A stretch of DNA of 64,000 bases from Perna viridis (GCA_037379345.1 CM074512.1:59231597-59295596); one strand, 5' to 3'; positions 12,040-61,800 are shown, numbered from the stretch's first letter. Notes: generated by a model not told the origin, from the sequence alone. Program-made: numbers and translations.

Positions 12040-13150
12040 CGATCCATAATCAAGTCAAGTCCAAAATAAATCTGATAAAACAGACATTACACCACCGAGC
12101 AGATGGTACCGCAATAGCCCGGACTTGGTACAGGCATTTCAAATAAAATGGTGGGTTAAATCTGGGTTTTACAGTGTGCCAAACCACCCTCTTTAATTGC
12201 AGTGTGAATATACCATGGTAATAAAATACCATTTGGATGCTATAGTGTCATAATTGGTAAATCGGTGGTCATATCAGCATAAAGAATTATTTACAAAAAG
12301 CAATCATTACTCATTGTTTTAAAAGAAACAGTATTATTCAACCAAGGACTGATATTGAAAAAGAATTTGGTAAGAGACCTTTTGAGACGCATTTCCTCAT
12401 AGAACTGATTCAGGAGTCGGTTTTGCAGATACTTGCGTTCAAGAAATCGGAGTAGTAAGTACTTGCTCTAGCATAGCGAATCAATTGTGAAATATAGACA
12501 TCATATACAGGAGATGAAGGTATATTACTGCACAGGTAAGGAAAATCTATAATTTTAAATTAAAGTCATCTCTTTTATCATAAATCTTAGTGCCGAGACG
12601 ACCACTGTTGTTGAATTCAAGATGTATATTCCAAAAAGATGCTGGATAAGCTATTTCTGTAGTCTCTTTTTTCTTGAGCTTTGATGGATATATTGAAGGT
12701 GACGATTTACCAAAACAAGGGTTGTTAATGGACAATACATTAATAATTAAAGGATTTAGCACCTGAAGAAATTCAGTTTTGTATGAATATAAAAACAAGA
12801 TGGCTAATAGAGGAGCAAAGTTAGTACCCATTGGAATGCCAAATTGTTGCTGAAATATAGCTCCTCTAAATGTGACAAGTATATTATCAATGAGGAAATC
12901 AAGCATGCTGCAAACCTGCCCTATTTGTATCACACTTTACCCTTCTGAGATTTTTTTTAGAAAAGTATATAACCAAGAACAACATAATTTCTCAAATCAG
13001 CAAAAGATATATGAATAAGTCCTTTTAAATGAGATTTAAATTTATCATGTGGCAACATTGTGTAAAGAGTTGAAAAGTCCAAAGTTTGAAGAGAACTAAT
13101 TTCTGAAAAACTCTGGGATTTCAGGTTTTGAAGTAAATCTTTAGAATTTT
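12040..13150 (-). mobile_element. Decayed Penelope-like retroelement (RT C-terminal part plus 3' tail)
   Basis: The - strand gives DFSTLYTMLPHDK (~13030-13085), GIPMGTNFAPLLAILFLYSY...GRLGTKIYDKRDDF (ORF 12547-12933) and IPSSPVYDVYISQLIRYARA (~12470-12530), resembling PLE-type RT motifs. Deletions and frameshifts are present. Confidence 0.8.
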
Positions 13151-26097: not shown

Positions 26098-26256
26098 ATG
26101 ATGAGGGTTGTGCTTAATTTGGTTGTGTTGCTGAGTCTGATTGGCTGTTGTCATGGTGATGGACAGTCCATGCAACATTTGATTCTTTTGGACCAATTAC
26201 CAAGCCAGTTCAGTTTGTACTCCTCCCCACAACTCATTGTTAGGACCAATTTTAGC
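26098..26256 (+). CDS. ORF A exon 1: signal peptide and start of ectodomain
   Basis: Acceptor ttatttcag| at 26064, ATG at 26098, donor AGC|gtaagt at 26257. Confidence 0.75.
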
Positions 26257-38200: not shown

Positions 38201-41200
38201 TTAATGCCTTTATTGTTAGACATCTACTCTTTCTTTTCTAAAATTCCTGTTGCTATAGAAAATCATGTTCAAGAATTTATCAGGAATGATTTTACAGCTT
38301 GTATTAGGATTTGAAAAACTACTTAAAAAACAACGTAAAGAGAAATTTTAATTTACTGATTATTAGTGTCTGTTGTCAACAAGGAACTTTATTCCTGAGT
38401 CTTGTAATAGTATTTAGTATGGACCCTTCTGCATGTTAATTTTTGTTACTGCAAAAATCTGAAAATCATACTTTCTATAGTTAAATGATTGCAATCATTG
38501 TATACTCGTGCATTTATACAAGTGTGAAGCAAATACATGCTAACTCATACTATTGTTAGTTCACATTTCCTGGTTACAGGAACTTTAAACTTGAAACCTG
38601 AAGCAAACCAAACTTACCAGTTCCATGATTTTAGGGAATACTTTGAAACTCCTTGTTAATATTGGGCTTTAGATTTCAAGCTGTTTGCAAGAAAGATAAA
38701 CCTTCTGTGTTAGTTTTGCATAATTAAAGCTTGAAGTCAACACCTCCTGAACTATAAATGCTATAAAATAGATTTGATGAATCTTAATTTGGAGGTTTTA
38801 CATCATGTACATGTGAATTGAGAAACTAATTAATTGATATTAAAAAGGGGAGATAACACAAGGTTTTTTTATGTTCTCAGTCCAAGAGGAACACAAGTTT
38901 TATTGTGAGCTTCCTGAAATGAACATGAGATTTAATGTAAAAAAATGGTATTTAAAAGAAGCAATGCTTTACTTTATACATGCAATGAAATAAATAATGG
39001 GATAAAAATGGGGTTATTTGCCACAATACCAAGACTGGTACTCACAACACTGGGAATGATTAGCAATCGCCATCTTTTATTTTCAGGGCTTTGTTGATTT
39101 TAAGGAATCAGAAGATTTTAAAGTTCTTTTGAATGTTACTGCACCAGCTATAGAAGAAGCATATGCTGTTACAGCTGACATCACTGAAAGCAAGGGCAGA
39201 CTACTGATTCAGGTTGTAAGTATTCTATGATCTTTTGAAGAATCGTGTAGATTTTGAATTCATCAGGTTTTTAGGAAATTGTAATATGACTATAAACCTC
39301 TTTAAAATTCCATGTCATATTGTGAATGTACTTTAATTCATGGATACTAATTTTTGTGGATTGCAAAAGAAAGAGAAGTTCGTGGATTTTTGAATTCATG
39401 GTTTTGAGGTTTACAGGATACACATTTTTTGGTCTACCCACCAAAACCACGAAAATTGGTACCCCATGAATAATAGTACTTTCACAGTAGTTAGATGTTA
39501 GTAGGTGTGAAATTGCAAGACACATTAGTTCCGATAATTTTATATAATCTGTTAAAGTTTTTTAAAAGCAGACTTAAACTGTTTCCTTGTTTAGTGTTAA
39601 TAAAGGTCATAATTCAACTTTCAACTCATCTGGATGACATTATTATTTGCACGCCATGGATTGGTGAGTATTGTGATCCTTACATTCTTAGAATTTTTTA
39701 TTCTATTCAATCTTGGATTTGTTCATTTTGTTCCATAATAATTAAAATATCTTACTTTCCACAGTACGAAAACAAAACTGCTTCGTCACCTGTTACCTTA
39801 CCATGGATATTTATTTTCATCACCATAGCAACATGTCTTGTCATTATATTGGCATCTGTTTATGCAATCTGGTGGTATTGTTCCAAGAAGCATTTGGACT
39901 TACAGAGGGACTATTACAGTCATGGCAATGTTATGTTCAGATCGAGAAACAGTGAATGTCTGTCATCAGGGCCAACAGATTTACTTCTACAGTCAGAACA
40001 TGGTAGAGATAGTATGGTGGATGATGGGAAGGATTTACCTGATGTGTCAGAGGAAGATGAAGATGAAGATGGAAGGGTAAATTTTTATTACAGTGTCTTT
40101 TCCAGGTTTATGAAAATTTACAATTGCTTATTTTCAGTAAATTGGGGGTTAATTCACAATTTGTTTGATAAAATATAATTCATTTTAGGTAATGCTCCTA
40201 GTTAGTTTGATTTCAGATTAAGGTTTAGTTACGTTGTTTACTCATAGAATTTGTTTAATGTATGTGATTAGTATCTGCATGTACATTTTCAGCATTGGTC
40301 ACTGGAACAGTTATGAAACTCCCTTTCAGAACTGCCCTTACATCAATTCAATTTTAGCTGTAATGACTTAATCAGTCCAAAAGTCAGTTACTGTAAACTG
40401 GAAAAATTTTTTTTGTGGTTTCTGTGATCAATGTACTTTTGTGCTGTTTTAAATTCCAGATAATTTCTCAAATCTTATTGTAATTCTTTGAAGAAAACAA
40501 TTGTTACTGTCTAATTTTCTTGTTACAGGTCTTACCGCAAATAATAGTGAAAAAACTTGAAGTTAACTTTTACAACATTTAACTTGACTTATGTAATTAC
40601 ATGTTGACACCTTCATGTTTTGTTCTATAGTTCATTTTTTCCCCACTTTTAGCCAATAAGAAGAAAGAAAAAAACTGTTGTTCGTCTTGATGAGAGTGAT
40701 GAAGACAATGAGAAGGTGGATGAAAAACTGACAATAAAAAGACGTTATCAACCTCCTACAAAACGTTTGTACAGAGAGCAACAGATGAGAAGACATGGAA
40801 GAAGGAAACGGCATCCATCTTTAAATGATCCTCCATCCTATGATGCTGTAATGGAATACCCTGAGGGATCGAGTGATGAATCAGATGAAGAAACAAATCA
40901 GAAAAAAACTTATATAAATAGCTCAAGAAGTGTGGAGGAAAGAAGCAAACGAGATAAGCAGTTTGTAGAAAGTAGTCGCAGCTTTGGTGAACAAACATCC
41001 TATCAGAGAAGAGACCTGTATTCATATAATCCTTTGGCCTTTCAAACAATTCCTGTTGCTCACTCTGATACAGAGTTAAGTGTGCCGTTGAGGAGTCCCA
41101 GATATGTTGCACATAATATACCTCCAAGAGGCTTTGTTAACCCAATGGAAAGGCATGGTGATGAATATACTGAAAATAAAGATAAAAAGTTTGAAAAAAT

Positions 41201-43570
41201 ATTGAATAGTAAAGAATCCGTTATACAGGGAGAAAGATCAAAATCTCCATTTGGAAAGGAGAATAGAAATCGTTCAACTCCAGTTCCAAGGGAGGAACGT
41301 GTGCAATCACCGAACAATTTAGAAAGAAGTGCTTCATTCCGATCAAATCATTCTCAATCATCACGTCACGAGAGAACAAAGACTCCTACATCAGTTGGTA
41401 GGACTACTCCTAACCATTTTGACAAATCAAGTACGCCCAGCCATTATGAACAATCCAGCACACCCATTTACAGTGATAGATCAAATACAGTTAGTCAGTA
41501 TGCTAGAGCAAAATCCCCAATGGACAGAAATAAAACACATATTTATGCCAAGGCCAAGAAACCACCTCCCCTTAAACTACCTCCAGGGATTGCAAATGAA
41601 ACAACCAAACAAAATAATTTGGATGAAACATCTGGATACATTCAGCTGAAATCAACATCTGGTCCACCAATAGAAAAACTAACACCTATAGATCAGGTGG
41701 ATTCTAGTAATAGCAATCCAATGGATATTCCGTTGACTACTTTCACTGGTTCCTTGAAGAAGAAAAAGAGGCACAAAAGTAAACCAGAAACTGGAGGTAT
41801 TGTATCCTTTAACTGATGGGAACTTTTCAAATTCCTTACTATTAGAACTTCTTTGCAATTCTTCTTCCGTGATAATTTACTTTTTTATTGCAATGCATAA
41901 AGAAGAAATTCTTGTCATGTTAGTCACTGGAAATTGTACAATCAATGGGGCAGAGAAGTGCTTTTGTTTATCGTTTGTTAACATGCAATTTGGATGGATA
42001 AAAAATTCTGGAAGGATTCCTACAAATAGCGCATTGAATGTTTTTCTTATGCAGCTAAAAAGGCTGAGTAGTTATGATTGATTCATAAAAATGGATGATT
42101 TTTAATTAAAAATTTTAGTTCATCTTAGATATTATAACAGTAAAAATGTTGCAATGATATGAGAAAATGATGTCAATGTCTTTTGGAAATGCAACTACTA
42201 TATATAAAAAGAAAGAAATGTAGTAATATATGTACAACAAATGCAGAGAATAGACAATAATTCCACTAGAAAAAATTACATACAGCTTAAAAACAAGAAA
42301 GATTTCCATTTCAGGGGTTTATGCTTACCCATTTTGGTTAAATGTATCAGAATGTAATGAAATTTGAAATATTTTTTTATTTTATTATTGAAAAATAAGT
42401 TGTTTTTTGTATGTCAAATTTAGAATCTCCAAAGAGGAACGTTCTAGAAGGATACAATTACAACACTCTGCCAACATCTCCACTCTCCCCAAGGCATCCA
42501 CTGAACATTACTGGTACATCCACAATTAACTCACAAAGGTTCAGTGTACTAAGTGATAACTCTATATCACTGTACAGTAGTGGTGAAGTATATAGCCCAA
42601 CTGGTACAGGGGCTGATAAGGACGAGGAAGATGATGATGATGATGCATTCGAAATTGATTTTGAAATTCCTCCATTAAAACCGATGGAAGCAGATGGACT
42701 CTCTGAAGCTAGCCTTCCATTACCTAGCCCACCAGCATATGCTAAGATGCCCCCAGGATACAGCCCAAGGACCCTTCTGCCATCGCCAAAGCCAAGACCC
42801 CAACCTTTGAGTGCACTTAGCCACAGTATTCCTGTTGATGAAGACATGCTTAGTAAGTTTACTTAACTGACATAAAAACTTGAGTAGATCAAAATTAAAG
42901 AATGACTAAATTTTTTTTTAAAGAATCATGATGCTTTTCTTAATTTTCTTACATATATACAGTAGAACCTAGTGAGTTTGATATATTAAGGGAGTAAGGA
43001 AGTTGGGGGATTATACAGGACCAGGACAATGAATTGCAAATGTTGTTAATGTATACTATAAAAGATCTAACTATATAGACTCCTGGAAAACTCAGGGTGC
43101 AAATTGTTGAAGATAAACAAATGAAATATCTTATTCCAATTCGAAAAATCATTACCATTACAAGGAAAATGTATGCATAGTTTTATAATGGGTACATTAC
43201 ATTAATAGGTGGTACATACATTGGACTGACAGCCTCTCCTACCAATACTATGGACAGGATCTTTCAGTTCCCTTCTCCACACAGAGATTCTGGTATCTCT
43301 TCTGAACGTAGTCTTCCATTGTCACAGGGAGATGATTCTCCAATCACATCCCCATCTAGACCTTACCACCCAGCCCAGAGAGAGCTTCCCCTACTCCCAA
43401 CGCAGGGATATGCATGGAATGGTGGTAGAAAAACCCCAGAAAAGGGGGAATATGCCAGAATAAAACAAGCCAACGACGCTACAGCTAAAGAAAATGGTGA
43501 AGTAAAAGTAACCCCTAATGCTAGTGGTGGTGGTGGTAGGAAGAAACCAGTACTGAAACCGAAGGCGTAA
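26098..43570 (+). CDS. ORF A (exons 1-6): uncharacterised single-pass type I membrane protein, ~844 aa, with a small ectodomain and long disordered adaptor-like tail
   Basis: Exons 26098-26256, 39087-39215, 39765-40076, 40653-41796, 42424-42852 and 43209-43570 (stop) or 43566 (donor). All junctions are GT-AG and phase-consistent (0,0,0,1,1). Signal peptide MMRVVLNLVVLLSLIGCCHG; TM WIFIFITIATCLVIILASVYAIWWYC (39804-39881); tail rich in S/P/R/E. Confidence 0.8.
28188..28259 (+). repeat. Fragment of the Penelope-like 3' tail seen at ~45715-45790
   Basis: tgttttccatgtctggtctttgtccctggattacattcttttgat is shared almost exactly with ~45741-45785. Confidence 0.75.
30121..30164 (+). ncRNA. Minimal type I hammerhead ribozyme, probably Penelope-derived
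   Basis: atgctg-CTGATGA-gagg(ttact)cctt-GAAA-c(acat)g-TA-cagcat. Stem I is 6 bp, the catalytic core is intact, stem II is 4 bp with G-U closing, and stem III is 2 bp with a palindromic acatgt cap. GUA cleavage triplet at 30156-30158. Confidence 0.7.
33242..33900. repeat. Minisatellite, ~10-11 copies of a ~61-69 bp unit
   Basis: The unit tttggcatgggagaggtgggttacatgtcaaagaaccaagaagctttataacatgttctgta repeats; some copies carry an extra gaaccaa. It explains the repetitive ORFs at 33261-33822. Confidence 0.92.
36585..36930 (+). mobile_element. HINE-like (Helentron-associated non-autonomous) element, partial
   Basis: Terminal hairpin atgtctcccc...ggggagacat, a GTCY-type microsatellite (gtccgttggtccgtct...), then ~171-bp internal tandem units starting tgtcagtgcaac at ~36687 and ~36858. 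Confidence 0.65.
37413..37510 (-). repeat. Inverted fragment of the Penelope-like 3' tail
   Basis: The reverse complement matches ~45541-45638 (ggacttgactttttatgagcaact...ggtgcacc). Confidence 0.75.
39087..39215 (+). CDS. ORF A exon 2 (ectodomain; not in the ORF track)
   Basis: tttcag|GGC...GTT|gtaagt, 129 nt, encoding GFVDFKESEDFKVLLNVTAPAIEEAYAVTADITESKGRLLIQV. Confidence 0.75.
39318..39489. mobile_element. TA-flanked MITE (TACTGT...ACAGTA family)
   Basis: Termini tattgtgaatgtact / agtactttcacagta with internal ccacgaaaattggtacc motifs. Relatives lie at 56708-56891 and 63002-63203. Confidence 0.7.
39765..40076 (+). CDS. ORF A exon 3: transmembrane helix and juxtamembrane region
   Basis: ccacag|TAC...AGG|gtaaat, 312 nt, with a hydrophobic stretch followed by CSKK. 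Confidence 0.85.
40653..41796 (+). CDS. ORF A exon 4: low-complexity cytoplasmic region
   Basis: 1144-nt open exon (contains ORF 40716-41816), with acceptor ttttag| and donor G|gtattg. Confidence 0.9.
42424..42852 (+). CDS. ORF A exon 5: Pro/Ser/acidic cytoplasmic region
   Basis: 429 nt, phase 1-1, donor A|gtaagt. Confidence 0.85.
43209..43570 (+). CDS. ORF A exon 6: ends at TAA 43568-43570 or splices at 43566 into ORF B
   Basis: Phase-1 acceptor taatag|; the exon ends ...AAG GC|gtaagt, where the donor overlaps GCG TAA. Confidence 0.8.
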
Positions 43571-43810
43571 GTAGACATGATGGATGTCTTCATAATGTTT
43601 AAATGTGTATTGAAGCTTTTTTACTGTAAATGTATGCACTTTGTTGAATGGTTTATGTAAAGCAAAAAAAACAAGTGAAATGTAAGCATATGTTTATTGG
43701 TTTTTGTTCTGATGTTGACATTTTAGAGATATTTAATCAGATATATCGTTAATACATAAAAATGCTGTTGTAGAAAAATTATAAATAACAATTCTTCATT
43801 TCCTATGCAG

Positions 43811-46800
43811 GTTACATTTAGCTGTGATTTGTAGTATCTCAATACTAAGTCTTGCTTCAACAGTATACAGTGCTCTCTTACCATCTCAAACTCAAGTTCA
43901 TGTTACTGTGTATGCTCCTAAAAACTTCCTTCAGAAAGAGATTCAGGTGTATTTTAACCAGAATAGACCAGGGGAAATCCTAGATGATCAACTACATAAC
44001 ATACAGGCTTATGGTAAAATTATTAAGATAAAGATTTATTGGTTTTCAATGAGGAATAAAAGAGTTTCAATAAAGAGTATTTATTTTAAGAGCTGTGTGA
44101 CATAAATTTTATTATTGGTAATTTGTACAAAATTCCTTTGATGTGTACCTGCTGATTATGCTTGGATCAGGCAAACTGACTTGATACAAGAAATTATTGT
44201 GTCAGTTTGTAATATGAATGCGCCATTTACCGGTGTATAAATCCCCTTTTTTCAGTGGGTCAATGAAATCATGTCTTAATGTGACATTGCAATGACAGCC
44301 AGATTTGTACTTGTTTTCTGTAAACAATATTTTGTTTGTTTGTTGTTGTTGTGGTTTAACGTCCGAGCAGCAATATTTCAGCTATTTTCAGACGAAACAA
44401 TATTTTGCAAACGAATACAAATGAATTGTGGTACATATACAGCAATATTGCAGATCTCTTAAAACATTTGTCCTGAAATGATATAAATCAATCAATACTG
44501 TACATTTCTAAGGACACGGGTAAAATTTGCTGTATTCTTACCTGTACGTGTAATTCGTCTTCACGCGATCTGGAGAACAAAATATGGGGAAACCATGATG
44601 CTCTTATGAATTATGCTGAGGATGTTAATTTTGTCTTGTAATCTAGTTACTTTATAAATTACTACATTGTATTATAAAATACAATATAGCACATGGATAG
44701 TAACCAGAAGATTGACAATGTTTATCATCCTTTGTTTTTTTAGCATCTACACTACACAGGAGTGGTTTTTTACATTCAGTAGAACTGTCAAGATTGTAAA
44801 CATATCATAACTCAACATTGATGAATTTAACTAATCCTTTATAATAATGCACAAAAAATATCATCAAATTAATCTTGTAGTATGCTAACCTTCCCCTGAA
44901 ACATCACTTCATCAACTGACACACACATGCTAAATTTTGACCAGACCATATCACAAATCATATCAGTGGTCATTCAATAAAATAGTCCCCATTTAAGTAA
45001 TACTTTCGGTAATATTTTGAACATATTTCAGATAAGAAGCATCATTTTCTTTCATAATTTGTAGACTATGGATAAAAAGGAATAAATGATATTGTGTTTA
45101 AGGTAGTGACTTCTTCATAGTTATATCAGGGCTCACCTGATATGAAAAATGATAAAGTCAATATCAAAAACAAAATACCATTTATTCCTGTAATAAAATC
45201 TATTGATACTTGTAATATCAATATGTTAAAATCATATGTGAAATTGCATTTTTATACCCCCCACACACCCTTTTGAAGAAGAGGGGGGTACATCCCTTCT
45301 GCACCTGCGTATATGGAGTGTTCATATCACAACACATACATTATGCCAGAGCTTGTTGGAACTATGCAGACTTTTTGTATTGCGCTAGAACTCTAACAAA
45401 TAGGCTTCTGGAACAGGGTTATGTTGCTACAAGATTGAAGTCATCACTACAGAAGTTTTATGGTCGTCATCATGAACTCGTGGATTGTTATGGTGTATCC
45501 ATCTGCACCATGAAAACTGATTCATTCAGTGGGTCATAGTTTTCCTTTCCTCATTTGTCTACCCTGGACTTGACTTTTTATGAGCAACTCGGCAGGTGTT
45601 TCTAGAAAAGTAGAGGACGCTTACACTACCGGTGCACCTGGTCCATGCTCCCAGTTTCTAGTGGAGTCCGAGTTGCTCATTTGCTTTTGTTACTTTGTAT
45701 GTATGATTTTAGTTACTTTGTGTTCTTTGTTGTGTGTGTCTGTTTTCCATGTCTGGTCTTTGTCCCTGGATTACATTCTTTTGATAATCGCTATAACCTT
45801 GGTTCCCTTGATTACTCCTTAGGACTGTCCGTAACCAGAACTTTTGTAAAATTTTTCTCAGGAACTACTGATCATAGTACCTGAACATTTTTAGTATGTC
45901 TCAGCTAATGGTCCTATATAGCACTTACTGATTTTAGTCCTGTTGGACAATTACTTCCTTTTTAACGACTTTGGGAAGAATACATTTGTGGGGGAAAGCG
46001 GGGGTATTCTCAGTGAGTAAGTGGCTCACAGATCAAATGTTGTAACAGCATACTGAGTAATGTTTTATATATCATTAATATCAAGTTCACTTTTTTCAGA
46101 TATGGCTGACCCATATTTAAGGGTGGTGAACTCCTCTTTCTGTAGTACTGTACAATGTGAACATGGCTGTGATGAAAATAATGGTAACTGTATCTGTAAA
46201 AAGGGATATAGACTTGATGCCAAAGGAGTCTGCCAAGGTGAGATAAATAATCAGACTCGCTTATTTCTAACATATAGATATTTATGTAAAATTTTAAAAA
46301 AATGAATAAAAATTACATATGATAAAATAGAACACCAGATTTATAGAAAAAAAGGGAGAAAATAAACAACATTGTCATATGCTTATTTGCATAAGCCTTT
46401 GTGATCAGTGAGATTAATAAAACTCGTTCTGTTCTGTGCCAGTCTGTCCATATCTTATATCCCTCTTGTTCCATTTGTTATATCCTTGTAATATTCCTGT
46501 TAATATTTTTAGATGTTAATGAGTGTAGATCAGTGATACACCGTTGCCATGAGAATGCTGATTGTCTTGATAGAGAAGGAAGTTACCAGTGTCACTGTAG
46601 TGGATATTACTATGGTGATGGTAAAACTTGTTATGGTAAGGCTAAGACTTCTGGGTGTAATAGTTTTCACAGTTCACAAATAAGTGCCAAAAATAGTATA
46701 TATAAATTTTTTGGTATTAATTGGTTTTTTTTTTTTTTGAAGCTGCAAAATTTGAAACATGCAAAAATGAATATAAAAAATTAGCAAACTCAAAAATCAA

Positions 46801-49800
46801 TAGTTTACAATTTGTTTGGAAATTTGTTTTTAACTTTAACCAAACTTCAAATGAAGTGTTAATTTTATATTTTCTAAAATTCTTTTATAAGTACTGTATG
46901 TTTGTTATTACATATATACCATATTCAAAGATAAATGATATTAATCATTAGTGAAATTAAAATCAATCATGTCTTTATACAGAATTAAGATCTCTTTGGC
47001 AACTGAAGTTAATGACTCAAAAATAAATTTCACTTTATAAAAAGATTTCCACACTTTCCCATTATTTTTGTTCATGTATTGGCAAAATGAATATGTAAAA
47101 CAAATGTGAAGTTATTCAGCTCGAGTTAGGTATTGCGGAGAAGTAAAAAAGTGACATTTTGTTGAAACCTATGTACTGCAGTTTGTAAGTACATTTTTTA
47201 GCCAATTTTAACACCTTCCCAATGTTTATTTTGAAATTATCAAATTGTAATTTTGCTATTATTATGATTCTTTAATCACTATATTTACATCCAATTTTGA
47301 TAATTTCCTTGTGAAATCATTCCTAGTGTAGCCAATATGCAGTCTTGTTTCGTACAAAATATCTATTGGATTTATTATTTCCAGAATGTGCTGCACCTTG
47401 TGGTGAAGGGACCTATGAGTTCCAGCCCTGTAGTCAGAATCAGAAAAAAATTTGCTTAGGTATAGTAACTCCTTTTAATACATACTATTACTATAATAAG
47501 TATTATATTTATAATAGTTGATGAATGGGTAAATTTATTGTAAAATATTAAGCTTGACACAGTGGCTGACGTTTGTTTTCTCTTTAACTAACTGCTGCAG
47601 GCAAGCCTATCAAAATTCTCAAACATTTTTTAAATCAAGTGTCATTTGACAATTGGATAACATCACCTAAATAATCATTCAATTTTTCTCGACTTTGCAA
47701 GATTCTTGCATTTTCTGAGAGAGCTGGCTGCAGTGTCTAGAGTGATATTTCGAATGTCAGACACTGTTTGGAGCATGGCCAAATAGTTGATCTGGAACAA
47801 TAATGAATAATGTATTTGCTTTTTGAACACATTGGTCCATTAAAATGCCCCTGCAATGGTGTCAATGCACCAATAACAGCTTCCAGTGCACGGACAACAA
47901 TACAAAATGTATCACTTGTTTTAAGTAGAAGAGTGAGGGGTTTGCCAAATTAACCATGAACTGTTGAAACAAATGATCAAAAAACTTCTTTTTAAAAAGT
48001 AATTTCTTCATATTTTCATGGTGCCAGTACTTTATGAATGAAAATGCAAGAAGTTGTGTTTCCCGGCCTTCAAATATACATAGTTTGACTTAAATTAATT
48101 ATGCAAACTAACACATTTTGCAGTACTTTAATACAATGCATAGAACAGCAATTATGAGACAGTGCAATGATTCTTTCCTTATCTATGACTTGAAAGAGTG
48201 TTTTCTAAAAAACATGCTCACACTATGTCAAGTGTGGATGTTGAATGGTATAATAGTTAATGATGTGCATTTACTGATATATAAGTGATATATTTGCCCT
48301 CATATTTCAAGCCAAGCAGGCAGCACATCAGAGGTGGAGTGATAACTGTTGGCTGGAAGTGAGGATTATATGTCTTAGTGGAGTGACATGCTTACCTTCA
48401 GGCTGTTATTCTGTGAACAAGAACAATAAAAATCTGGCTTGGTGTGTCTGACTTGTACAAAGCAGGGTCTGTTCCATTGATCAAAAGTTCTCATCCTAAA
48501 ATGCAAAAAATATCTGTCATGGGACACTAAACCGCAATTTAATCAATCAATCACCATTCCATCTTACTGTTGCTTTATAATGTGTTTTAGTGAGGACTAA
48601 TGTATAGTGTGTCTACCTGGATTAGTAGAGTTTGTATTTCATCCTAAATATTATACCTGTATTTCATCCTAAATATTATACCTGTATTTCATCCTGAATA
48701 TTATACCTGTATTTCATCCTAAATATTATATTTGAAAGAAAAAGTTTCATCATAAATATATTTTTAGATTGTACAAAAGAATGTGCAAAAGGATTTTACA
48801 TGACAAGAAGATGTCATGCACAGGGAGATTCTGTTTGTCGAAGTAAGTCTTTTAATAGAACTTTTACTTTGTGAGTACTGCTGTATATATTATATCAGTT
48901 AGTATTTATACGCTGTTTATTCACTGGAATAGGTTTTAAAGATTGGAATTGCTACAGAAAATACTGTGCCCTCTAGTAGGACTGTGTTTCCCTCATCATC
49001 CATATAAATCTAAAATAGTTTAAAATCCACACCTAAAGTATTGAATTTATCTTAAGAATGACCACAACCTTTAGGGAAATCGTTGTTTTTGAAAAGTTTT
49101 GGAAGTTTGTATAATTAATGAGCTAAGGTAGGCTATTTAATTGCTGTTTCTGTTGAAAAGTGTTAAATGATAAGAAAAAAACAACAACAAAAAATAAACT
49201 TATCATTTTGGAACCAACTCAACCACCACCTACATATTTTTTTCTTCAAAATGCCCATTACTGTTATTATTCCTTTCAAAACCTGGGACCCGCATTTGTA
49301 ATTTTCATTAAAATGACCATCTACATTCATTGTCATCCATAGTATTTTGCAGGATCCTAAGTTAATTAGGAGATAGTTTTGATTCATTATCTGAAGTTTG
49401 ATGTTAATTTTAATGTTCAAGCCCATCACATTTAATGAATACATTTGAATGATTAATCTAAAGCACATTATTAAACTCACATTGATGATACAATGAAGTA
49501 GTCTTGCATATAAACAAGACATGGTATATGTTACACAATATTGACTCATGGTCATTGTGATCAAGATTTTTCTGATAGAAAGCAAACATAAATAAAACCT
49601 GTATTGACATTGGAATGTTACATTGTTAACACTGGATATTTATATTAAATTGCATGTATTCAGATATAATCTCAGTGTGTTGAGAGTAATCAGTCTTTTC
49701 GGTTAAGCAGTAGTCCGAAGCTAAAGGCTTGTCAAAATGGAGGTGGGCCTGTAAAATTAACTACTACAAGCCAACACTCACTATATGAAATTTTCTGAAA

Positions 49801-52800
49801 AATGTATCTCGGGCCTGTGAACTGGAAAGTTAGTTTTGAAGACTTAGTAATGGTATGAAACCTAATTTTGAAACACTGTAGTAACAGAAATCTTCACAGA
49901 ACTTTTTTTGAAAGTATAAAGATCTTGGTTTTTTTTTTTTTTCAGTGTGTCATAAGAAATGTGAAAAGGAAGAATTTGAATCTTCCAGATGTACAGATGT
50001 CACTAATAGAGTTTGTCAAAGTAAGTTATATGTTTTAGGAACAAGGCTTTGATAAGCAATATATCAATTATTTAAATGAAACATATAGGTTTCTTAGTAA
50101 TTTTCATAGTTGCTTTAAAACTCCTCTGTTTTTCACTTTCAACAGTGTAAATGTTGTTATATAGTGAGTTGAGATAAAAGATAAGACTGCTGAAATGCAT
50201 AAGAAGCAAAATATCATACAGTCAAACCTTGGTAGCTCGAACTCCAAGGTACCACTGAAAAGTGTTTGAATTATCGTGGAGTTCGAGAAATGAAGTTCAT
50301 AGAATTCCAGATTTTTTTGTTGCCGGTGCAAGTTTGACTTTATCATTAGAAATCACTTATTTCCTATGAAGTTTTGTTAGTACATGTACATGCATCTTTT
50401 TCATTCCCTTTCGGGAGATTATGTAGACTTGTGGACATTAAAAAAGCTGTGTTTGCTTTTAAAAACGTTCAGAGTTTGAGTTTCTAAGTCCATAATTTGT
50501 TTTTATCTGATTTTCTTTGATGCTTTCATCATGCCGACTTCAAAACATTCTCAAACTTCAATCAGTACTAGGTTAAGATAAAAACTACATAATTAGTGAT
50601 GACTTAAATTTTACATGTAATTAACTATAATGACACTGAATAAGGATAGGGTTTCAGTTTTTCACACCTTTTATTACCCACGCTGACAAAATGGATGACA
50701 AGTTCGAGTTACTGAGTCTCTAAGATTTATTACCGAACAAACCGACTAGTCAGATCGAGTGTTCAAGTAATCCAAAGTTGTTTTTATTGATTATATTAGG
50801 GAAAATTTTGGTACAGTCGAACTTCACTCGCTTGAACTCGTATGGCTCGAACACCTGGGATTTCTCGAACACAATTCAAAGTACCAAAATTTTCTCCTAT
50901 ATAATCAATATAAATAACCTTGGATTTCTCGGACTTTGATTTCTCGAAAACGCGAACTGACTAATCGGTCCATTCGGTAATAAATCTCAGAGAATAAACC
51001 TCACTAACTCGAACTTGTCAGCCATTTTGTCAACTTGGGTAATAAAAGGTGTGAAAAACTGAAACCCTATCATCACCAGTGTCATTTTAGTTAATTACAG
51101 GTAATATTTAAGTCATCACTAATTAGGTAGTTTTGATAAAACTGATTAAAGTTCAAGAATGTTCTGAAGTTGGTATGATGAAACCATGACAGAAAATCGG
51201 ATGAAAACAAATTATTGACCAATGAACCCACACTCTGGACATTTTTAAAAGAAAATACAGCATTTTTAATATCCGTAAATCAACATAATCTTCCGAAAGC
51301 GAATAAAAAAGATCCACGAACTAATACAACTTCGGAGGAGGTAAGCAATTTCTAATGATAAAGTGGAACTTGGACCGCCAACGAAAGAAATCCGGAAATA
51401 TACGTACTTCAATTTCTTGAACTCCCGATAACTCAAACACATTTCAATGGTTCCTTGGAGTTCGAGCTACCGAGGTTTGACTGTACTTTGAATTGTGTTC
51501 AAGAAATCCTGGGTGTTCGAGCCGTCTGAGTTCAAGTGAGTGAGTTCGACTGTAATTATAATTTAATCTGTTTCAGAAGGTAGTATTTTTAAAAGTAATA
51601 TGGAACAAATTTAGGATAACAAAATGTTGTTATGTTTTCTATACTTTTACATTTATACTGAACCTAACATGATTCTATTGCATTTAAAGAAATTGCAATG
51701 TTTATTTGCAGTATCATGTTTATTATGGTGAGCAATAGGGCTAAAAAGAAGTTAATTCAAATGAATCACAATAAGATCATTGCTATGTCTTGTTGCAATA
51801 AATTGAAAAATAAAAAATTTTGGTTCATTGACATTATATTGTGATTTTTATATTGCTTTAAAAAACTGTCAAAAAACAAGTAATTTCTGAAAATGATCAA
51901 CGGCATCCATTTTTTGTTTGAAAAGAATGTAAAAGCATGAGAGATAAATGTTCTTTTTTTATCAAAAAAATATTCTATCTGCTATTTTATATTTTATATT
52001 GATTATTTTAAATACTTATAAAAGTTTTTTTTAAAGCTGTTTGATGGAAATAAATAATAATTAGTTTATATTTACATGTTTATAGATCGTAATAAGTTAG
52101 CACCTCCTATTGCCAGTGGTAATGTCATCTTAGAGAATATGAGGGATGTATCAAAGTTCAATCAGGAGGAGTTGTTTAGACCTCGAGGATTTCATATTGA
52201 TAGAGGTAAGTTGTATTCCTATTTAAGAGGGAGGGCTGTACTGATATCAGCTTGTCTGTCTGTCTGTTCTTTGTCCAACTAATGTTATTACATTTTCTCA
52301 GTTTCTTCTAGACAGAATGGGAGGAATTTTTCAAAGTAAGTACACAGCTTTAACACAATGAACAGGATTTTTTTTACTTCTGGTAGATTCCATCTTCTCT
52401 TTTGAGGAGTTTAAAATTTGTGGGGTTTCCTAAGCATGATAGTACATGCAACCTCATGCTTTTTAATGTTGAAGGGCCCTGTTTTTTTTCTCCATAACAA
52501 ATTTAATGACTTTAGGTTTTCATAGATCTGGATTTTCCAGAAGCTCTATGGCTGATATCGTTGACTGGTTGATAATGAATGCCATACAGATTTTACCATG
52601 TATTATTTTTTATGTACCAATGAAACTTTTTTTATGAATTTTATTTTTAAATCTTTATTTGTTGAGAATTACTGATTACTTACAACATAAATTGGATGGT
52701 TTTTTTTCAGGATCAGGATTCTTTATCAAAGGAAATGTAATTTTCTTTAGACCTCAGATTATACTTCATCCAGTGAACCATGAGAAACAGAATGAATTGA

Positions 52801-55800: not shown

Positions 55801-58800
55801 CCGACTGCAACTTTTGTTTACAAAATTTTTTTTTGCAAATGCCAGCTGGGCTACTAAAATAGAAAAAATGATTGCCCAGGCACATTTCTGGTCGCCATTG
55901 ACGGATGGGCGACCAATAATTTTTTCCCCTGGAACACCTTGTGAACCTGTAGAAATAGACATTTTGTTACATTTTCAATAATAGTATTTGGGTAAATGCT
56001 TGTTCAACTGAAAATTGATTAAGAAGATAAAAACAATTTTCTGTTAGCTTACCTTTAGAAAGTAGCTTTCCAGTTTTGTATTTTTAGAGATGAGATAGTT
56101 GACATTGAGGTAGATTCCAAGGTCAGACAGATCCCTGACTTTATCAAAGTGTTAACGGGGAGAAAGGAGATAGAAGCAGGACAATACAAAAGTCATACTG
56201 CTAGTGTGTCTACCCTGTACACTGAAACTATAGGACTGTGTAGGCCTGATCTACCATTCAGCACCACTTCTGAATCATTTGGTAAGGTTATCAGGATAGG
56301 TGTAACTTTCCACTATGGTTGTGTATGCTCTTTCTTTTATTCCTTGTTGCAAAATAGTTTAAACTTTCATACCCTCGCTCCAAAGGAGAGGGGGTTTACT
56401 GCTTTACCCTGTTCATAAGTTTTTTTCATCACAGCGGCTTGAAATTTTAACACATTCTTCTTATAGGTATGCCCAGGGACTTTATATTACTAATATACAC
56501 TCCATGGTATGCCGAATGGTGGGATCCATTTTTGGCAAAATTCAACAACATCTTCCTGTTTACCAAGGACTGTTTTCCTTATATCTTGATTGAAAGTGGC
56601 CTGATATCACTAGTGAGCCATCACTCACAGATTTCTTGTTTAACCATTTTCATTGACCACTCAACATATGAAATGTACAATTTCCAGGCAAAAACTCTAG
56701 AATGAATTACTCTGAAAGTACAATTGTTTGTGGGGTATCAATTTTCATGGTTTTCGTGGGTAGGGAAAAGGAGATTTCCATTGATATGTGTACTAAACAC
56801 CTCAAAACCATGAATTCAAAAATCCATTAACAAGTGTTTATTTTTTAATCCAAGAAAATTGGTATCCACCAATTAAAGTACTTTTACAGTAAGAATTTTC
56901 TGAAACAAAACTGTATCAGAGTCATTCCTATACTCAAATACCTATTAAGTACAAAAGCATGAATGTGAGTGAGTATGAATACTACTCATAATAGCGAAAA
57001 AAGAATGCAGCTTTGAAAATGTTCTCACTATTTCTGTTTCAGCTAAGCACTCCTGTGATGATGAAGTTCTCTCTAACCTGATTATAGCTACTGGGTTAGA
57101 TGAACCATTTGTCAAATTCCCTGGAAAAGTAGATCATATCCATGACAACTATACATACACTGTTTCTTCAGAAGATTCAACCAACTTACCAAATATGAAA
57201 ATTACTGTTAATCGAAAGAAATCTCTGCTGGAGTCACTGTTTCCAATGGCAACATTACAGTTTGAGAACCTACTTGGAAATATATCCCATAATGCAACTC
57301 ATTGGGTTGTGAATTTGACTGGAAGAATTGAAAAATGCCCAGGTGGACATTTTTAAAAAAAATTATGTTCCCTTTAGATAGTAGAAAATTTATTATTTAC
57401 TTAGAGAATACATATCCATTAAAAATGAGTCAATATTTTTTAGAATAAAAACCTTAGACACCATATTAATACACATACTTTCAATGTGAGACTGTATTTG
57501 TAATTGGATTAAGTGTTCTTCTGTTTATTTTTCACAGTTTTGGGAGATTTAAATGAAACTTTTAGGAAATGATTATTTGGATTTAATAATTAAAAAAAAA
57601 AAAAAAAAAAAAAAAAGAATCAGGGTTCCCATAAGCATGACATAGACATAACTATGATAGTAGGGATATCATTTTGTATCTGTGATTCCTTCTTTACTGC
57701 TGGATAGATTTTATGAAATTTTGAGGAAATGGTAAGTTGATGCCATTGTGCACATGGGATTTTGATTTGTTTATCTAAATGAATGAAGGGTTACCATTTA
57801 TAGTGTAACGTTGTCTTCAACATTAACTCTGATAGGTTTATGATTTTTGTTTAGGCTTTATTTTGACTAGAAATTTGACATGGACTAAAAAGAGAAGCCT
57901 GTTCTGTGTCTTCGAAATCTTTTAACATTTTTTTTTTAATTCTACCTTTAATCTGACTAAGGTTTGAGTTTATATCAAAATTTAAATTCTGAGGAACATT
58001 TACACATTCTAGTTTCAAAAATTGATCATTGCTTTTTTTAGTGTTGGAAATGTAATAAAGTTAGCATGATGTTGACAGTTCATTTAAATACAATCATTTA
58101 TTTCAGGTGTTTTGGGTATCAACTTAACAGATCCTGGTTACCCAGATGAACCTTTGTACCAGTACATGATAGAAGTCACATGCCCAGAAAAGTTTGATTT
58201 GACCTTTGGTTTACCTACTGGTGACAAGCCTTTCCTCAACAAAGAAGTTGTTCTTAGTGTCAAGGACAAAAAATATATGCATCAACTATTTGTGTTCAAA
58301 CCAGCTTCAAAGAAAATATACTATACTCAAGGTGAGAGAATATTGTATTATTGCAAAAAAAAAAATGAAATTTCAGCTTAGAAGTTGATATATTCTCAGG
58401 CCATATAAATATAGAGGGTTGTACAGAGCTTTTTAAGAACTAAAAGCGAAGTCATTTTAATTTAGGGTTATAATTTGCATTGAAAGAATGATAAAAGGCT
58501 ATCAAATGCACTGATTTCAATGTGTTATAAATTACAATGTGTATTGAAATGTGTGCAAGGCCCTTTTGTTCTAAAACTTTCATACCAATTTTGGACCAGC
58601 TGAAATCAGGCAAAATTGAAGAGTGGTCTACTCAGATATTAGAGAGTTGGGGAACAATTTGCATCTTGTTTTGCTTTGCTTAAAGTTAACAGATTTCAGT
58701 AGGATTTTATCAAAAGATAGTGTAAGAACCCCTAATTTAGCTTTTTTATAACTCATTTTAGACCCTTGGTAAGCTGTTTTCTTTCTTGGGTTTTAGGGTC

Positions 58801-61800
58801 AACAACAGGACAGATGGCAGCCTCAAAAGACCCACAGAAACCATCTCATTTCTCCATACCATTTATAGCATCTGTAGTGGGTGTTGTCATGTTACTACTG
58901 TTTATAACCTCATTTGGAATGATGGTTGTATTTGGTAAGTTTTTATACTCTGCCACACAAAGTAACAAGGTCTTAAGTGATAATCGCCAAAATATGACAT
59001 ATTCCATCTGTCTGTCCCTCGCCCCCAGTTTCCAGACAGTTACTTATAGATATATCATATGATCTATAATCAGGCAAATTTTGAACTTCAGTGTTGCTCG
59101 GATTATTAACACTAAAGTATTGGCCATTTCAAGTTGTTTTTTGTTTTTTGTTTTTTTTTATGATGAGTTATCTTTCATTGAACAATGAGAAATTAGAGTT
59201 TGATCTAATGTTACTATGTGATAATTTTTAATTAAGCATGTGTCCTTGGATATTAACTACAACACAACACAGAAGGGTAAATTTAATGTCCCATTAGATG
59301 TCCTTTTTGAGACACTATTATTTTGAAGAATGTTGCCTATTATAGGTAGTATTTTAATGTTATATTAAACTTGGCCTGCTCAGATTAATACATGGAAATC
59401 CCTGTTGAATTAGTGCTTTTATTATTATACACTGGTTATATTGAATATTTCTGTCTATCTACAGGTCAGCCAACTAGTGATGTGTTAATATTTATTATTA
59501 TACACTGGTTATATTGAATATTTCTGTCTATCTACAGGTCAACCAACTAGTGATGTGTTAATATTTATTATTATACACTGGTTATATTGAATATTTCTGT
59601 CTATCTACAGGTCAGCCAACTAGTGATGTGTTAAGATTTAACTGGTGCCACCTGGTGTTGATGGTTGGTTACATTTCCTTCCAGTTTCTCTTTGCCATTT
59701 GTGCTTCTATGACTGTGTTTGTTTTAGTGATTGTGGCTGTAAATAGGTAAAAAAAATAGATTTTTTTTTAATAATTTTACCCTGCTTTTGAATTGATTAA
59801 AGTGAGCACGGGAAATCTTGTGTCAAGATTCACCAAATGTTTTATGCAATTTCTTTTGATATGGCTAAATATTTTAGTAGTTTTAAATTTGTGCATTTCT
59901 CGGGAAAATGAAGATTTTAGTCTAATTAGTAGGGTTTATCTTACCCATCAAAGCATTGAAAATAGATATATTAACAGTCAAGTCTGTCTAAACTTGACCC
60001 TGAATAGATTGTTAACTTGCATGAAGTGAATTAAACAGATCAATTAAGACAGGTTGTAAATGTATTAATTTTTGTGGTCTACTAATTTTCTCTTGGTACG
60101 CCTTTGACGAAAGAGCTAAAAATAATAATAAACACGAAATTATTTTTTAACACTATGAAACACTTTTCATTTTTTTAAGTGCGAAAATTGATATCCACTG
60201 ATATGGTCACTTGACAGAATCCGCAAAAATTAGCAACTGTGAAAATTAATACTTTTATAATTGTCTGTGAAATGCATTAGTCTTGTAAGTCTTCTGTCTT
60301 TACCAATATAAATGCCTGTATTCCAAAGACAAAAAAAAGCAATTGAGTAAATGCCACTTTGAATTGATTTGTAGTGATACAACAGCTTTCTTGAAGAACT
60401 ACCAACAACAGAGATCTGTGAAGTCAGCCTTTACTCACTTAGAGATGGACCACATGGAGAGATATCTCAAGACAGAGATACAGAGACAGAACTCAGCAGC
60501 TAATCTCAGTAAACATGAATGTGATCAGCAAATGTTGATCATTATAGAAAACCTTAATGAGGTAATCAAATATTGTTATTTATGATATTATTAACAAGTA
60601 TAGAGTTTGGTCTTATATGTAAACTTGATAAAATCTAGATGAATATTTATGTAGATACACAAGGCAGCTTGAAGTTTGATACAAGCTAAAACATTTGTAC
60701 TTGTATTTAGATATGTTTATTGACAGATAAAAATTAACCGTACTAAAGTTTGAAATCATCCAACATGAACTGAGTTAGCTGAAGTTAGGATTACTTGAAT
60801 AGATGATGATATAACTTACTGTTTACTCCCATTATAAAGTATTACCTCTAAAAAAATATTATTCTCTTCCATAATTCTTATAGCTTCAGAAGGAAATAGA
60901 GAAGAATATAACGGATGATATAGAGAAAAAGGATATTAGAGGATTACTATCAAAACAGATCACATCTTTGTCACAGAAGTTTGTAAATAATGTTGCCGCA
61001 TTTAAGTAAGTGTACCATATTTTCAGCTTTTACAATTACCTTATTGTTCAATAATTCAGTTAGATGTCGCTGTTTCTGACTACTGTCTGTTTAGTTAACT
61101 TGTTATAAAATGAAGAAAAAAAACTATTGCCTTACATGATTTATTAGTCCGCTAATGGGGACTTTCATTGAAGGGGACTTTAGGATTGTGCTCTGTCCAT
61201 CTGTCCATCAATTTGGCAAGTCAGTTTTCTGCACTTTTTTTCTCATGCTTACTATTAATATATGATACATTGCTTTACCATGACAAGTTACAGATCTAGT
61301 TCACACTTTGTTTTGTTCTGCTGATTTTATGCTGATTTATGGTCCTTTGACTTAGAAAGTAAATGCAAAGACTCAGTTATCACTTCTTTTTCCTCATGCT
61401 TTTTGATGTAAGGTAGATATTTTTTATCTGTAACTTAACCATGACAAGTTACAGTTCAAGGTTGAATTTTGTTCTCGTTCATTTATTTTCACTGAGTAAT
61501 GCCCCTTAGACTTGGAAAATTAATGCAGTTTTCCACACTTTTCTTGTTAACAAATTATGCATGAATTTTGCATTCTGTTCTCTTCGACAAAAATTTCTTC
61601 CAGTAGGGGACTTTGTATTTCCATGTGATACTCTCAAAATGCTTGTAGAGGTTATTATAAGAATAAAACAATGTAGTATGCAGTGAGTAAAGTAATTACA
61701 ATCATACATTCAGACCTGATTTTAATAGTGCAAAAAATCCTAAATAAGTCATTGATAGGAGTCGTGGTAGAAGTTTTCTTCAGTTCAGGAATAATTTTTT

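What the first reader, a model, noticed from the sequence alone, without database searches (positions are those of the whole stretch)
43565..43873. Possible splice switch between a fused polyprotein and two separate membrane proteins (donor overlapping the stop vs ATG built across a splice)
Seen in sequence: ORF A ends AAG GCG TAA, but the same bases form a consensus donor GC|gtaagt (43567). Splicing to the acceptor cctatgcag| (43810) removes the stop and continues in frame: ...GGGGRKKPVLKPK-A-LHLAVICSISILSLASTVYSA-LLPSQ..., giving one ORF of >1880 aa. A second donor AAAT|gtaagc (43682) joined to the same acceptor keeps the stop and creates AT^G, giving MLHLAVICSISILSLASTVYSA, which looks like a signal peptide for ORF B. 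Only ~110 nt separate the stop from this split ATG, and I see no AATAAA before 44055. Established knowledge: basic residues followed by a hydrophobic stretch and small residues can act as an internal signal sequence cleaved by signal peptidase, as in viral envelope polyproteins. Inference: the locus either makes an adaptor+receptor polyprotein that re-enters the ER and may be cleaved, or a bicistronic/overlapping pair, and donor choice could switch between them. Short upstream ATGs at 43577 onward would hinder initiation at the split ATG.
Basis: partly seen in the sequence, partly recalled or inferred. Interest (0 to 1): 0.85.

Follow-up and report, generated by a model that had tools for sequence, protein, structure and literature searches.

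The report
Ordinary intron inside one membrane-protein gene
The "stop codon" is just the TAA inside a standard GTAAGT splice donor, so the two reading frames are almost certainly consecutive exons of one large, uncharacterised mollusc-like membrane-protein gene, and nothing supports a regulated splice switch.

Summary
Every sequence statement I checked holds: AAG GCG TAA at 43562-43570, donor GC|GTAAGT from 43567, acceptor ending at 43810, in-frame continuation, AT|GTAAGC at 43681/43682, first AATAAA at 44055. The >1880 aa figure was not checked.

Comparison with two other lineages settles the reading.
- L001 and L008 keep the same exon order, a GT donor at the same codon position (phase 2), a phase-2 acceptor and a 203-nt next exon.
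- The interval between the exons is 244, 1163 and 515 nt and shares nothing recognisable.
- In the most distant copy (L008) the donor is GTATGT. There is no stop there, and the frame runs 50 unconserved codons into the intron.
- In the window and L001 the next exon has no in-frame ATG, yet it is under purifying selection from its first codon.

So ORF A and ORF B are best read as one gene, and the stop is a by-product of a phase-2 GTAA donor.

The second donor with its split ATG is at chance level (P about 0.18). It has no alignable counterpart in L001 or L008, and in L001 the exon starts with A, which gives ATA.

What stays open is whether the signal-peptide-like hydrophobic segment built across the junction remains a membrane span or is cut by signal peptidase. 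I could reach no transcript data.

The parts
39765..40076 (+). Exon with the first strong membrane span (TM1), followed by SKKH and an acidic stretch. An NKT sequon lies just before the span.
   Evidence: Splice sites read. Conserved with L001 and L011. Kyte-Doolittle 19-residue mean 2.72.
40653..41796 (+). Large exon of the predicted cytosolic, low-complexity region. It carries the invariant motif RHPSLNDPPSY (a PPxY motif), an SSDESD acidic cluster and NPMDIPLTSF.
   Evidence: Homologues P0004-P0009. Alignment A2. No Pfam or PDB match.
42424..42852 (+). Exon with a second conserved PPxY motif (LPLPSPPAY). It ends in a phase-1 GTAAGT donor.
43209..43566 (+). Its last 13 codons (43526-43564, GGGGRKKPVLKPK) are basic and conserved up to the donor.
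   Evidence: alignment A3; last 14 codons against L001: pS 0.67, pN 0.10.
43567..43810 (+). A 244-nt GT-AG intron. Donor GTAAGT at 43567-43572, whose TAA (43568-43570) is the apparent stop. Pyrimidine tract and cag acceptor at about 43790-43810.
   Evidence: The orthologous intervals are 1163 nt (L001) and 515 nt (L008), with no conserved block and 22-29% ungapped identity beyond position +6. No AATAAA or ATTAAA inside.
43680..43687 (+). Judged a chance motif.
   Evidence: In L001 the exon starts with A.
43811..44013 (+). Next coding exon, 203 nt in all three lineages. Phase 2 at its start and phase 1 at its end. Codons 43812-43874 encode the 21-residue signal-peptide-like hydrophobic segment ending VYSA.
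   Evidence: alignment A1; codons 1-21: pS 0.59, pN 0.14; codons 1-5: 3 synonymous and 0 replacement changes; hydropathy 1.96.
46100..46237 (+). EGF-like exon.
   Evidence: Weak Pfam EGF_Tme5 hit. Conserved in L001 and L008.
46513..46635 (+). Calcium-binding EGF exon.
   Evidence: Pfam EGF_CA 3.7e-08, above the gathering score. Conserved.
47385..50020 (+). Three small exons (about 47385-47459, 48768-48870 and 49946-50020), each with a TNFR-like cysteine-rich module.
   Evidence: Pfam TNFR_c6 at 0.087, 0.00067 and 0.007, all below the gathering score. Conserved in L001/L015 and L008.
58790..58939 (+). Exon with a strong membrane span after the cysteine-rich region. Boundaries are approximate.
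   Evidence: Conserved with L016. Hydropathy 2.64.
60376..60567 (+). Further conserved coding block downstream, so the gene continues at least to here. Boundaries are approximate.
   Evidence: 80% identity at the protein level with L016.

Best explanation
Positions 43567-43810 are an ordinary, constitutively removed phase-2 spliceosomal intron inside a single large gene. The apparent stop of ORF A is the TAA contained in the donor GTAAGT. With two codon bases left in the exon, the frame reads xxG TAA, so any phase-2 intron beginning GTAA shows an immediate in-frame stop (established donor consensus GTRAGT). Splicing 43566^43811 joins a long cytosolic, low-complexity region to an EGF / TNFR-like cysteine-rich region. 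The cytosolic region carries two conserved PPxY motifs and ends in a conserved basic stretch. Across the junction a complete signal-like element is assembled: the basic residues come from the upstream exon, the hydrophobic core and a V-Y-S/C end from the downstream exon. Inferred mechanism: after the first membrane span leaves the chain in the cytosol, this segment re-engages the translocon as an internal start-transfer sequence (N-terminus inside, C-terminus outside). That puts the disulfide-rich EGF/TNFR-like modules into the ER lumen, and a later strong span anchors them. Shown: the gene structure and its conservation. Inferred: the topology. Unknown: whether the segment is then cleaved.
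For: (1) Donor conserved at the same codon position and phase in three lineages: GC|GTAAGT in the window and L007, CA|GTAAGT in L001, CA|GTATGT in L008. (2) L008 has no stop at the donor. Its frame runs on for 50 codons that resemble nothing in the other copies, so the stop is not the conserved feature. (3) The acceptor and the 203-nt next exon are conserved, and the split codon closes in frame each time (GC+G, CA+A, CA+G). (4) The next exon has no in-frame ATG in the window or L001, yet window versus L001 gives pS 0.59 / pN 0.14 over its first 21 codons, and 3 synonymous / 0 replacement changes in the first 5. (5) The upstream exon is constrained right up to the donor (pS 0.67 / pN 0.10), and its C-terminal GG..KP.L.PK is the part best kept in the distant L008. 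(6) The interval has variable length (244/1163/515 nt), no conserved block and random-level identity, and no poly(A) signal. (7) The exon order of both halves is collinear in the window, L001/L014/L015/L016 and L008. (8) Of the nine donors of this gene that I read, this is the only phase-2 one, and so the only one where the TAA of GTAAGT falls in frame. (9) The topology is coherent. Sequons lie before TM1 and basic residues after it. Basic residues precede the internal hydrophobic segment, and cysteine-rich extracellular-type modules follow it.
Against: I could reach no transcript or protein evidence. All database hits were exon-sized ORF calls on genomic contigs. Only three lineages cover the junction. 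In L008 the downstream exon has in-frame Mets (LHMTM...), so a stand-alone downstream product is possible there. The hydrophobic segment is only as hydrophobic as the candidate N-terminal signal peptide (1.6-1.96 against 1.93) and well below the two clear spans (2.64-2.72). That is what a gene's own N-terminal signal peptide would look like. A cytosolic loop of roughly 650-700 residues (summed from the exon coordinates) between luminal domains is unusual. The joined product was not built or searched.
Confidence: 0.8

Rival explanations
1. Two ordinary adjacent genes. ORF A really ends at TAA, and the downstream gene has its own promoter and an unrecognised 5' exon that supplies the ATG plus two bases.
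For: The hydrophobic segment looks like a classical N-terminal signal peptide. L008 has in-frame Mets inside that exon. TAA is present in the window, L001 and L007.
Against: There is no stop in L008. There is no in-frame ATG in the window or L001, and no conserved candidate exon in the interval. Coding constraint starts at the first codon after the acceptor. A spacing of 244 nt with no poly(A) signal would have to hold a 3'UTR, a promoter and a 5' exon. The adjacency and the phase match are kept in three lineages.
Confidence: 0.08
2. Donor choice (43567 against 43682) toggles between a fused product and a separate downstream protein started at an ATG built across the splice.
For: AT|GTAAGC is present at 43681/43682 and would give ATG with G43811. 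L008 also has an AT|GTAAAT 82 nt before its acceptor.
Against: Such sites occur 0.8-0.9 times per kb, giving P 0.18 (window) and 0.37 (L008) of at least one by chance. The two sites are not alignable. L001 has none, and its exon starts with A, giving ATA. A transcript using it would still need a promoter inside about 110 nt and would carry 9 upstream ATGs.
Confidence: 0.03
3. One fused gene as the main form, plus minor isoforms. Intron retention would give an A-only protein that ends exactly at the TAA. In lineages like L008, an internal start could give a downstream-only protein.
For: In the window, L001 and L007, retention ends the protein with no added residues. In-frame Mets are present in L008.
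Against: Neither feature is conserved across the three lineages: the stop is absent in L008 and the Mets are absent in the window and L001. A retained-intron mRNA with a stop far from the 3' end would normally be a target of nonsense-mediated decay (established knowledge). There are no data on this here.
Confidence: 0.09

Closest known systems
Phase-2 U2-type GT-AG intron with a consensus GTAAGT donor
   Same: GT and AG boundaries, a pyrimidine tract, position and phase conserved in orthologues, unconstrained interior of variable length, and coding constraint up to both boundaries. The in-frame TAA follows automatically from phase 2 plus GTAA.
   Different: Nothing structural. Removal has not been seen in RNA here.
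Internal signal peptides of viral glycoprotein precursors (for example the bunyavirus Gn/Gc precursor, cut by host signal peptidase; review PMC7926653)
   Same: A basic stretch, a hydrophobic core and a small-residue end (V-Y-S or V-Y-C) lie inside one ORF, downstream of a membrane span and upstream of a luminal domain.
   Different: This is a cellular, intron-rich gene with no viral domains. The segment follows a cytosolic low-complexity region of several hundred residues. Cleavage is untested.
Multi-pass membrane proteins with internal start-transfer (signal-anchor) segments
   Same: Alternating topology with basic residues on the cytosolic side of the segment and extracellular-type modules after it.
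   Different: The segment is much less hydrophobic than the two clear spans of the same protein. No related family was found in Pfam or the PDB.
Bicistronic or conjoined gene pairs in animals (upstream ORF with stop, downstream ORF with its own start)
   Same: Two protein-like units lie on one strand with a very short spacer.
   Different: The upstream stop is not conserved (L008), and the downstream start is absent in the window and L001.

Membership tests
Ordinary spliceosomal (U2-type) intron within one gene | GT donor and AG acceptor with consensus context and a pyrimidine tract | tested here: met
   GTAAGT at 43567 and ttcttcatttcctatgcag ending at 43810. GTAAGT is the usual donor of this gene.
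Ordinary spliceosomal (U2-type) intron within one gene | Position and phase conserved in orthologues, with the frame closed across the junction | tested here: met
   Window, L001 and L008: phase 2 on both sides, with split codons GC+G, CA+A and CA+G.
Ordinary spliceosomal (U2-type) intron within one gene | Flanking sequence under coding constraint and the interior unconstrained | tested here: met
   pN/pS pattern and 22-29% interior identity. No conserved blocks. Lengths 244/1163/515 nt.
Ordinary spliceosomal (U2-type) intron within one gene | Spliced junction seen in RNA | not testable with these tools
   No transcript-derived sequences were found.
Two separate genes / bicistronic pair | Conserved stop codon ending the upstream ORF | tested here: not met
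   L008 reads CAG TAT GTA and then 50 further codons.
Two separate genes / bicistronic pair | Start codon for the downstream ORF | tested here: not met
   No in-frame ATG between the upstream stop at 43782-43784 and the end of the exon in the window, and none in the L001 exon. Present only in L008.
Alternative 5' splice-site switch with a split start codon | Second donor and AT+G reconstitution conserved | tested here: not met
   Not alignable between lineages. L001 lacks it and its exon starts with A. The motif occurs at chance frequency.
Polyprotein processed at an internal signal peptide | Tripartite n-h-c element with small or neutral residues at -3 and -1 | tested here: inconclusive
   By eye, RKKPVLKPK + hydrophobic core + V-Y-S (window, L001) or V-Y-C (L008). 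Hydropathy equals that of the candidate N-terminal signal peptide. No signal-peptide predictor was available.
Polyprotein processed at an internal signal peptide | Actual cleavage by signal peptidase | not testable with these tools
   This needs microsome translation, N-terminal sequencing or proteomics.

The most novel reading that the evidence does not exclude
The fused precursor is a cellular polyprotein. Signal peptidase cuts after the conserved V-Y-S/C of the internal signal-like segment. One ORF would then yield (i) an N-terminal membrane protein whose PPxY-rich cytosolic region is tethered at both ends and (ii) a separate type I EGF/TNFR-like receptor-type protein, as in viral envelope precursors but in an animal gene conserved across several mollusc-like lineages.
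Probability: 0.25. Interest if true: 0.6.

Novelty: already known. Interest (0 to 1): 0.25.

Why it matters
The practical lesson is for genome reading. A stop that coincides with GTAA or GTGA at the end of an open frame is what any phase-2 intron looks like, and it should not be taken as a gene end. The gene itself has no match in Pfam or the PDB apart from its EGF and TNFR-like modules. It joins a PPxY-bearing cytosolic region to a receptor-like ectodomain through a signal-peptide-like segment assembled across a splice junction. If that segment were cleaved, this would be a rare cellular counterpart of viral envelope polyproteins, and it could be tested directly.

Tried and rejected
- Exon-sized protein searches and the length-free HMMER search with the 387-aa exon returned only exon-sized ORF calls on genomic or metagenomic contigs. 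There was no annotated full-length protein and no transcript, so "one or two genes in annotated orthologues" could not be answered.
- Scans of metagenome contigs and genome contigs for more lineages found nothing.
- P0008 had no contig on record.
- L009-L012 are too short to reach the junction.
- L013 (P0011) is a rearranged, partly palindromic metagenome contig and was set aside.
- Pfam gave nothing for the cytosolic exons, the candidate first exon or the exons between the TNFR-like modules and the late membrane span. The PDB gave nothing for the three exons searched: the 387-aa cytosolic exon, 56979-57353 and 60289-60582.
- A paper search for the sample accessions found nothing, so the source organisms of the loci are unnamed.
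- A spliced-leader start that donates AUG was considered and rejected. AUG directly before G43811 gives a frame that stops after 8 codons (read).
- Structure prediction of single small exons was judged uninformative and was not run.

Full report
**Observation.** The window is AT-rich (about 31% GC) and has the small-exon, long-intron layout of an animal genome.
- AAG GCG TAA sits at 43562-43570.
- The G of GCG and the TAA belong to GTAAGT, which starts at 43567.
- The acceptor cctatgcag ends at 43810.
- Joining C43566 to G43811 gives GCG (Ala), followed in frame by LHLAV...
- AT|GTAAGC lies at 43681/43682.
- The first ATG of the interval is at 43577, one of 14 in the interval, none open into the next exon.
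- The first AATAAA is at 44055.

I did not verify ">1880 aa".

**Orthologous loci.** Searching with the last "ORF A" exon gave exon-sized ORF calls from other organisms, and their contigs were fetched.
- L001-L006 are one organism, with 60-77% protein identity to the window.
- L007 is closer, at 73-86%.
- L008 came from the length-free HMMER search with the 387-aa exon. It is much more distant, at 37-45% identity.

tblastn and tblastx show the same exons in the same order on the same strand, across both halves, in the window, L001 (extended by L014, L015, L016) and L008.

**The junction in three lineages.**

| Lineage | Upstream exon ends | Donor | Interval | Next exon starts | Split codon |
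|---|---|---|---|---|---|
| Window | ...KPK + GC | GTAAGT | 244 nt | G TTA CAT | GCG |
| L001 | ...RPK + CA | GTAAGT | 1163 nt | A TTA CAT | CAA |
| L007 | ...KPK + GC | GTAAGT | contig ends | not covered | not covered |
| L008 | ...GPK + CA | GTATGT | 515 nt | G TTA CAC | CAG |

Donor position, phase 2 on both sides, and a next exon of exactly 203 nt are shared by all three complete copies.

The decisive point is L008. Its donor is GTATGT, so there is no stop at all. The frame runs on for 50 codons that resemble nothing in the other copies. What is conserved is the splice donor, not the stop.

**Coding constraint.** Between the window and L001, synonymous sites are close to saturation while replacement sites are not.
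- First 21 codons of the downstream exon: pS 0.59, pN 0.14.
- Its first five codons: 3 synonymous changes and no replacement.
- Last 14 codons of the upstream exon: pS 0.67, pN 0.10.
- Beyond position +6 the interval drops to 22-29% ungapped identity, which is random level. No block is conserved with L001 or L008.

In the window and L001 the downstream exon has no in-frame ATG, so it must be translated from upstream. The C-terminal GG..KP.L.PK of the upstream exon is the part best kept in the distant L008.

**Why there is a "stop".** Of the nine donors of this gene that I read, this is the only phase-2 one. With two codon bases in the exon, the frame reads xxG TAA. From the established donor consensus GTRAGT, most phase-2 introns therefore begin with an in-frame TAA or TGA.

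**The second donor.**
- AT|GT sites matching at least 5 of 6 positions of GTRAGT occur 0.83 times per kb in the window. The chance of at least one in 244 nt is 0.18.
- L008 has its own AT|GTAAAT (chance 0.37), but it cannot be aligned with the window's site.
- L001 has none. Its exon starts with A, so AT+A gives ATA.
- A transcript using this donor would need a promoter within about 110 nt of the "stop" and would carry nine upstream ATGs.

I find no support for a switch.

**What the gene encodes.**
- Upstream half:
  - An exon with a strong membrane span at 39765-40076 (hydropathy 2.72), with a sequon before it and basic residues after it.
  - Then roughly 650-700 residues of low-complexity sequence, estimated from the exon coordinates.
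  - This region has two conserved PPxY motifs (RHPSLNDPPSY is invariant in seven sequences; LPLPSPPAY is shared with L008) and an SSDESD cluster.
  - By established knowledge PPxY is the ligand of class I WW domains such as those of NEDD4-family ligases. That is an inference, not tested here.
- Downstream half:
  - The hydrophobic segment.
  - A conserved block of unknown family.
  - An EGF-like exon, then a calcium-binding EGF exon (Pfam EGF_CA 3.7e-08).
  - Three exons with weak TNFR_c6 matches, all below the gathering score.
  - Further conserved exons with no family, then a strong membrane span at about 58790-58939 (hydropathy 2.64).
  - More conserved coding sequence up to at least 60567.
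- A signal-peptide-like open frame at 26098 could be the first exon. I could not confirm that.
- Outside the EGF and TNFR-like modules, no Pfam or PDB relative was found.

**Mechanism.**
- Shown: one transcription unit with an intron at 43567-43810, supported by comparative evidence only.
- Inferred:
  - After the first span, the chain is cytosolic.
  - The basic stretch comes from one exon, and the hydrophobic core ending V-Y-S/C comes from the next. Together they form an internal start-transfer element that takes the cysteine-rich modules into the ER lumen.
  - That is the only way the fused product is topologically coherent.
- Open:
  - The segment's 19-residue hydropathy is 1.96 (window), 1.82 (L001) and 1.61 (L008). 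This equals the candidate N-terminal signal peptide (1.93) and is far below the two clear spans.
  - V at -3 and S or C at -1 are conserved.
  - Cleavage by signal peptidase, as in viral glycoprotein precursors (review PMC7926653, found), is therefore a live possibility. No tool here can test it.

**Caveats.**
- No RNA or protein evidence was reachable.
- Only three lineages span the junction.
- In L008 the downstream exon carries in-frame Mets (LHMTM...), so a stand-alone downstream product cannot be excluded there.
- Intron retention in the window would end the upstream protein exactly at the TAA. Neither this feature nor the L008 Mets is conserved across the three lineages.
- None of the contigs looked human, and no N stretches were met.

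**Verdict.** The sequence observation is real. The interpretation as a splice switch is not supported. The locus is best read as one gene with an ordinary phase-2 intron. The residual interest lies in the unusual protein architecture and in the untested possibility of internal signal-peptidase cleavage.

Noticed in passing
window 33242-33905: Tandem array of a 61-62-nt unit (about 9 copies, 80-85% matches; also scored as a 121-nt period). It produces spurious long ORFs in all three + frames. It lies upstream of the confirmed exons, possibly in a large intron.
   Followed up: partly
L008 4859-4915: In the distant orthologue the hydrophobic segment reads LHMTMLCS..., with two in-frame Mets. The window and L001 have Leu and Val at those positions. 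A downstream-only product from an internal start is conceivable in that lineage only.
   Followed up: partly
window 52725-52901 and 53218-53379: Two open blocks conserved with L015/L016 (58-63% at protein level) in different frames and without a Pfam match. I cannot tell whether they are exons of the gene or a shared transposable-element remnant in the intron.
   Followed up: partly
window 59595-59744 (partial copy at 59449-59505): A conserved (74%), very hydrophobic open block (hydropathy 2.86) downstream of the late membrane-span exon, with a partial duplicate 90 nt upstream. It could be a further membrane-span exon or a repeat.
   Followed up: no
window 58088-58378: A 97-codon open frame that looks protein-like by eye but has no counterpart in L016 at E 0.01. 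Its exon status is doubtful.
   Followed up: partly
L001 10420-10640 and L016 11967-17748: The orthologous introns carry insertions that are absent from the window. One is a short duplicated motif just after the donor in L001. The other is a roughly 6-kb stretch full of called ORFs in L016, before the membrane-span exon. These are probably transposable elements, and they explain the differences in intron length.
   Followed up: no
L013 (JGI 3300042711 contig): This contig holds part of the upstream exon joined to the reverse complement of its own 3' end and donor. It is a rearranged or chimeric assembly, not an informative variant.
   Followed up: yes
window 12550-12936 (-) and 2070-2375 (-): Open frames that look by eye like fragments of a retroelement reverse transcriptase. 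Pfam gave no hit at E 0.01, so this is unconfirmed.
   Followed up: partly
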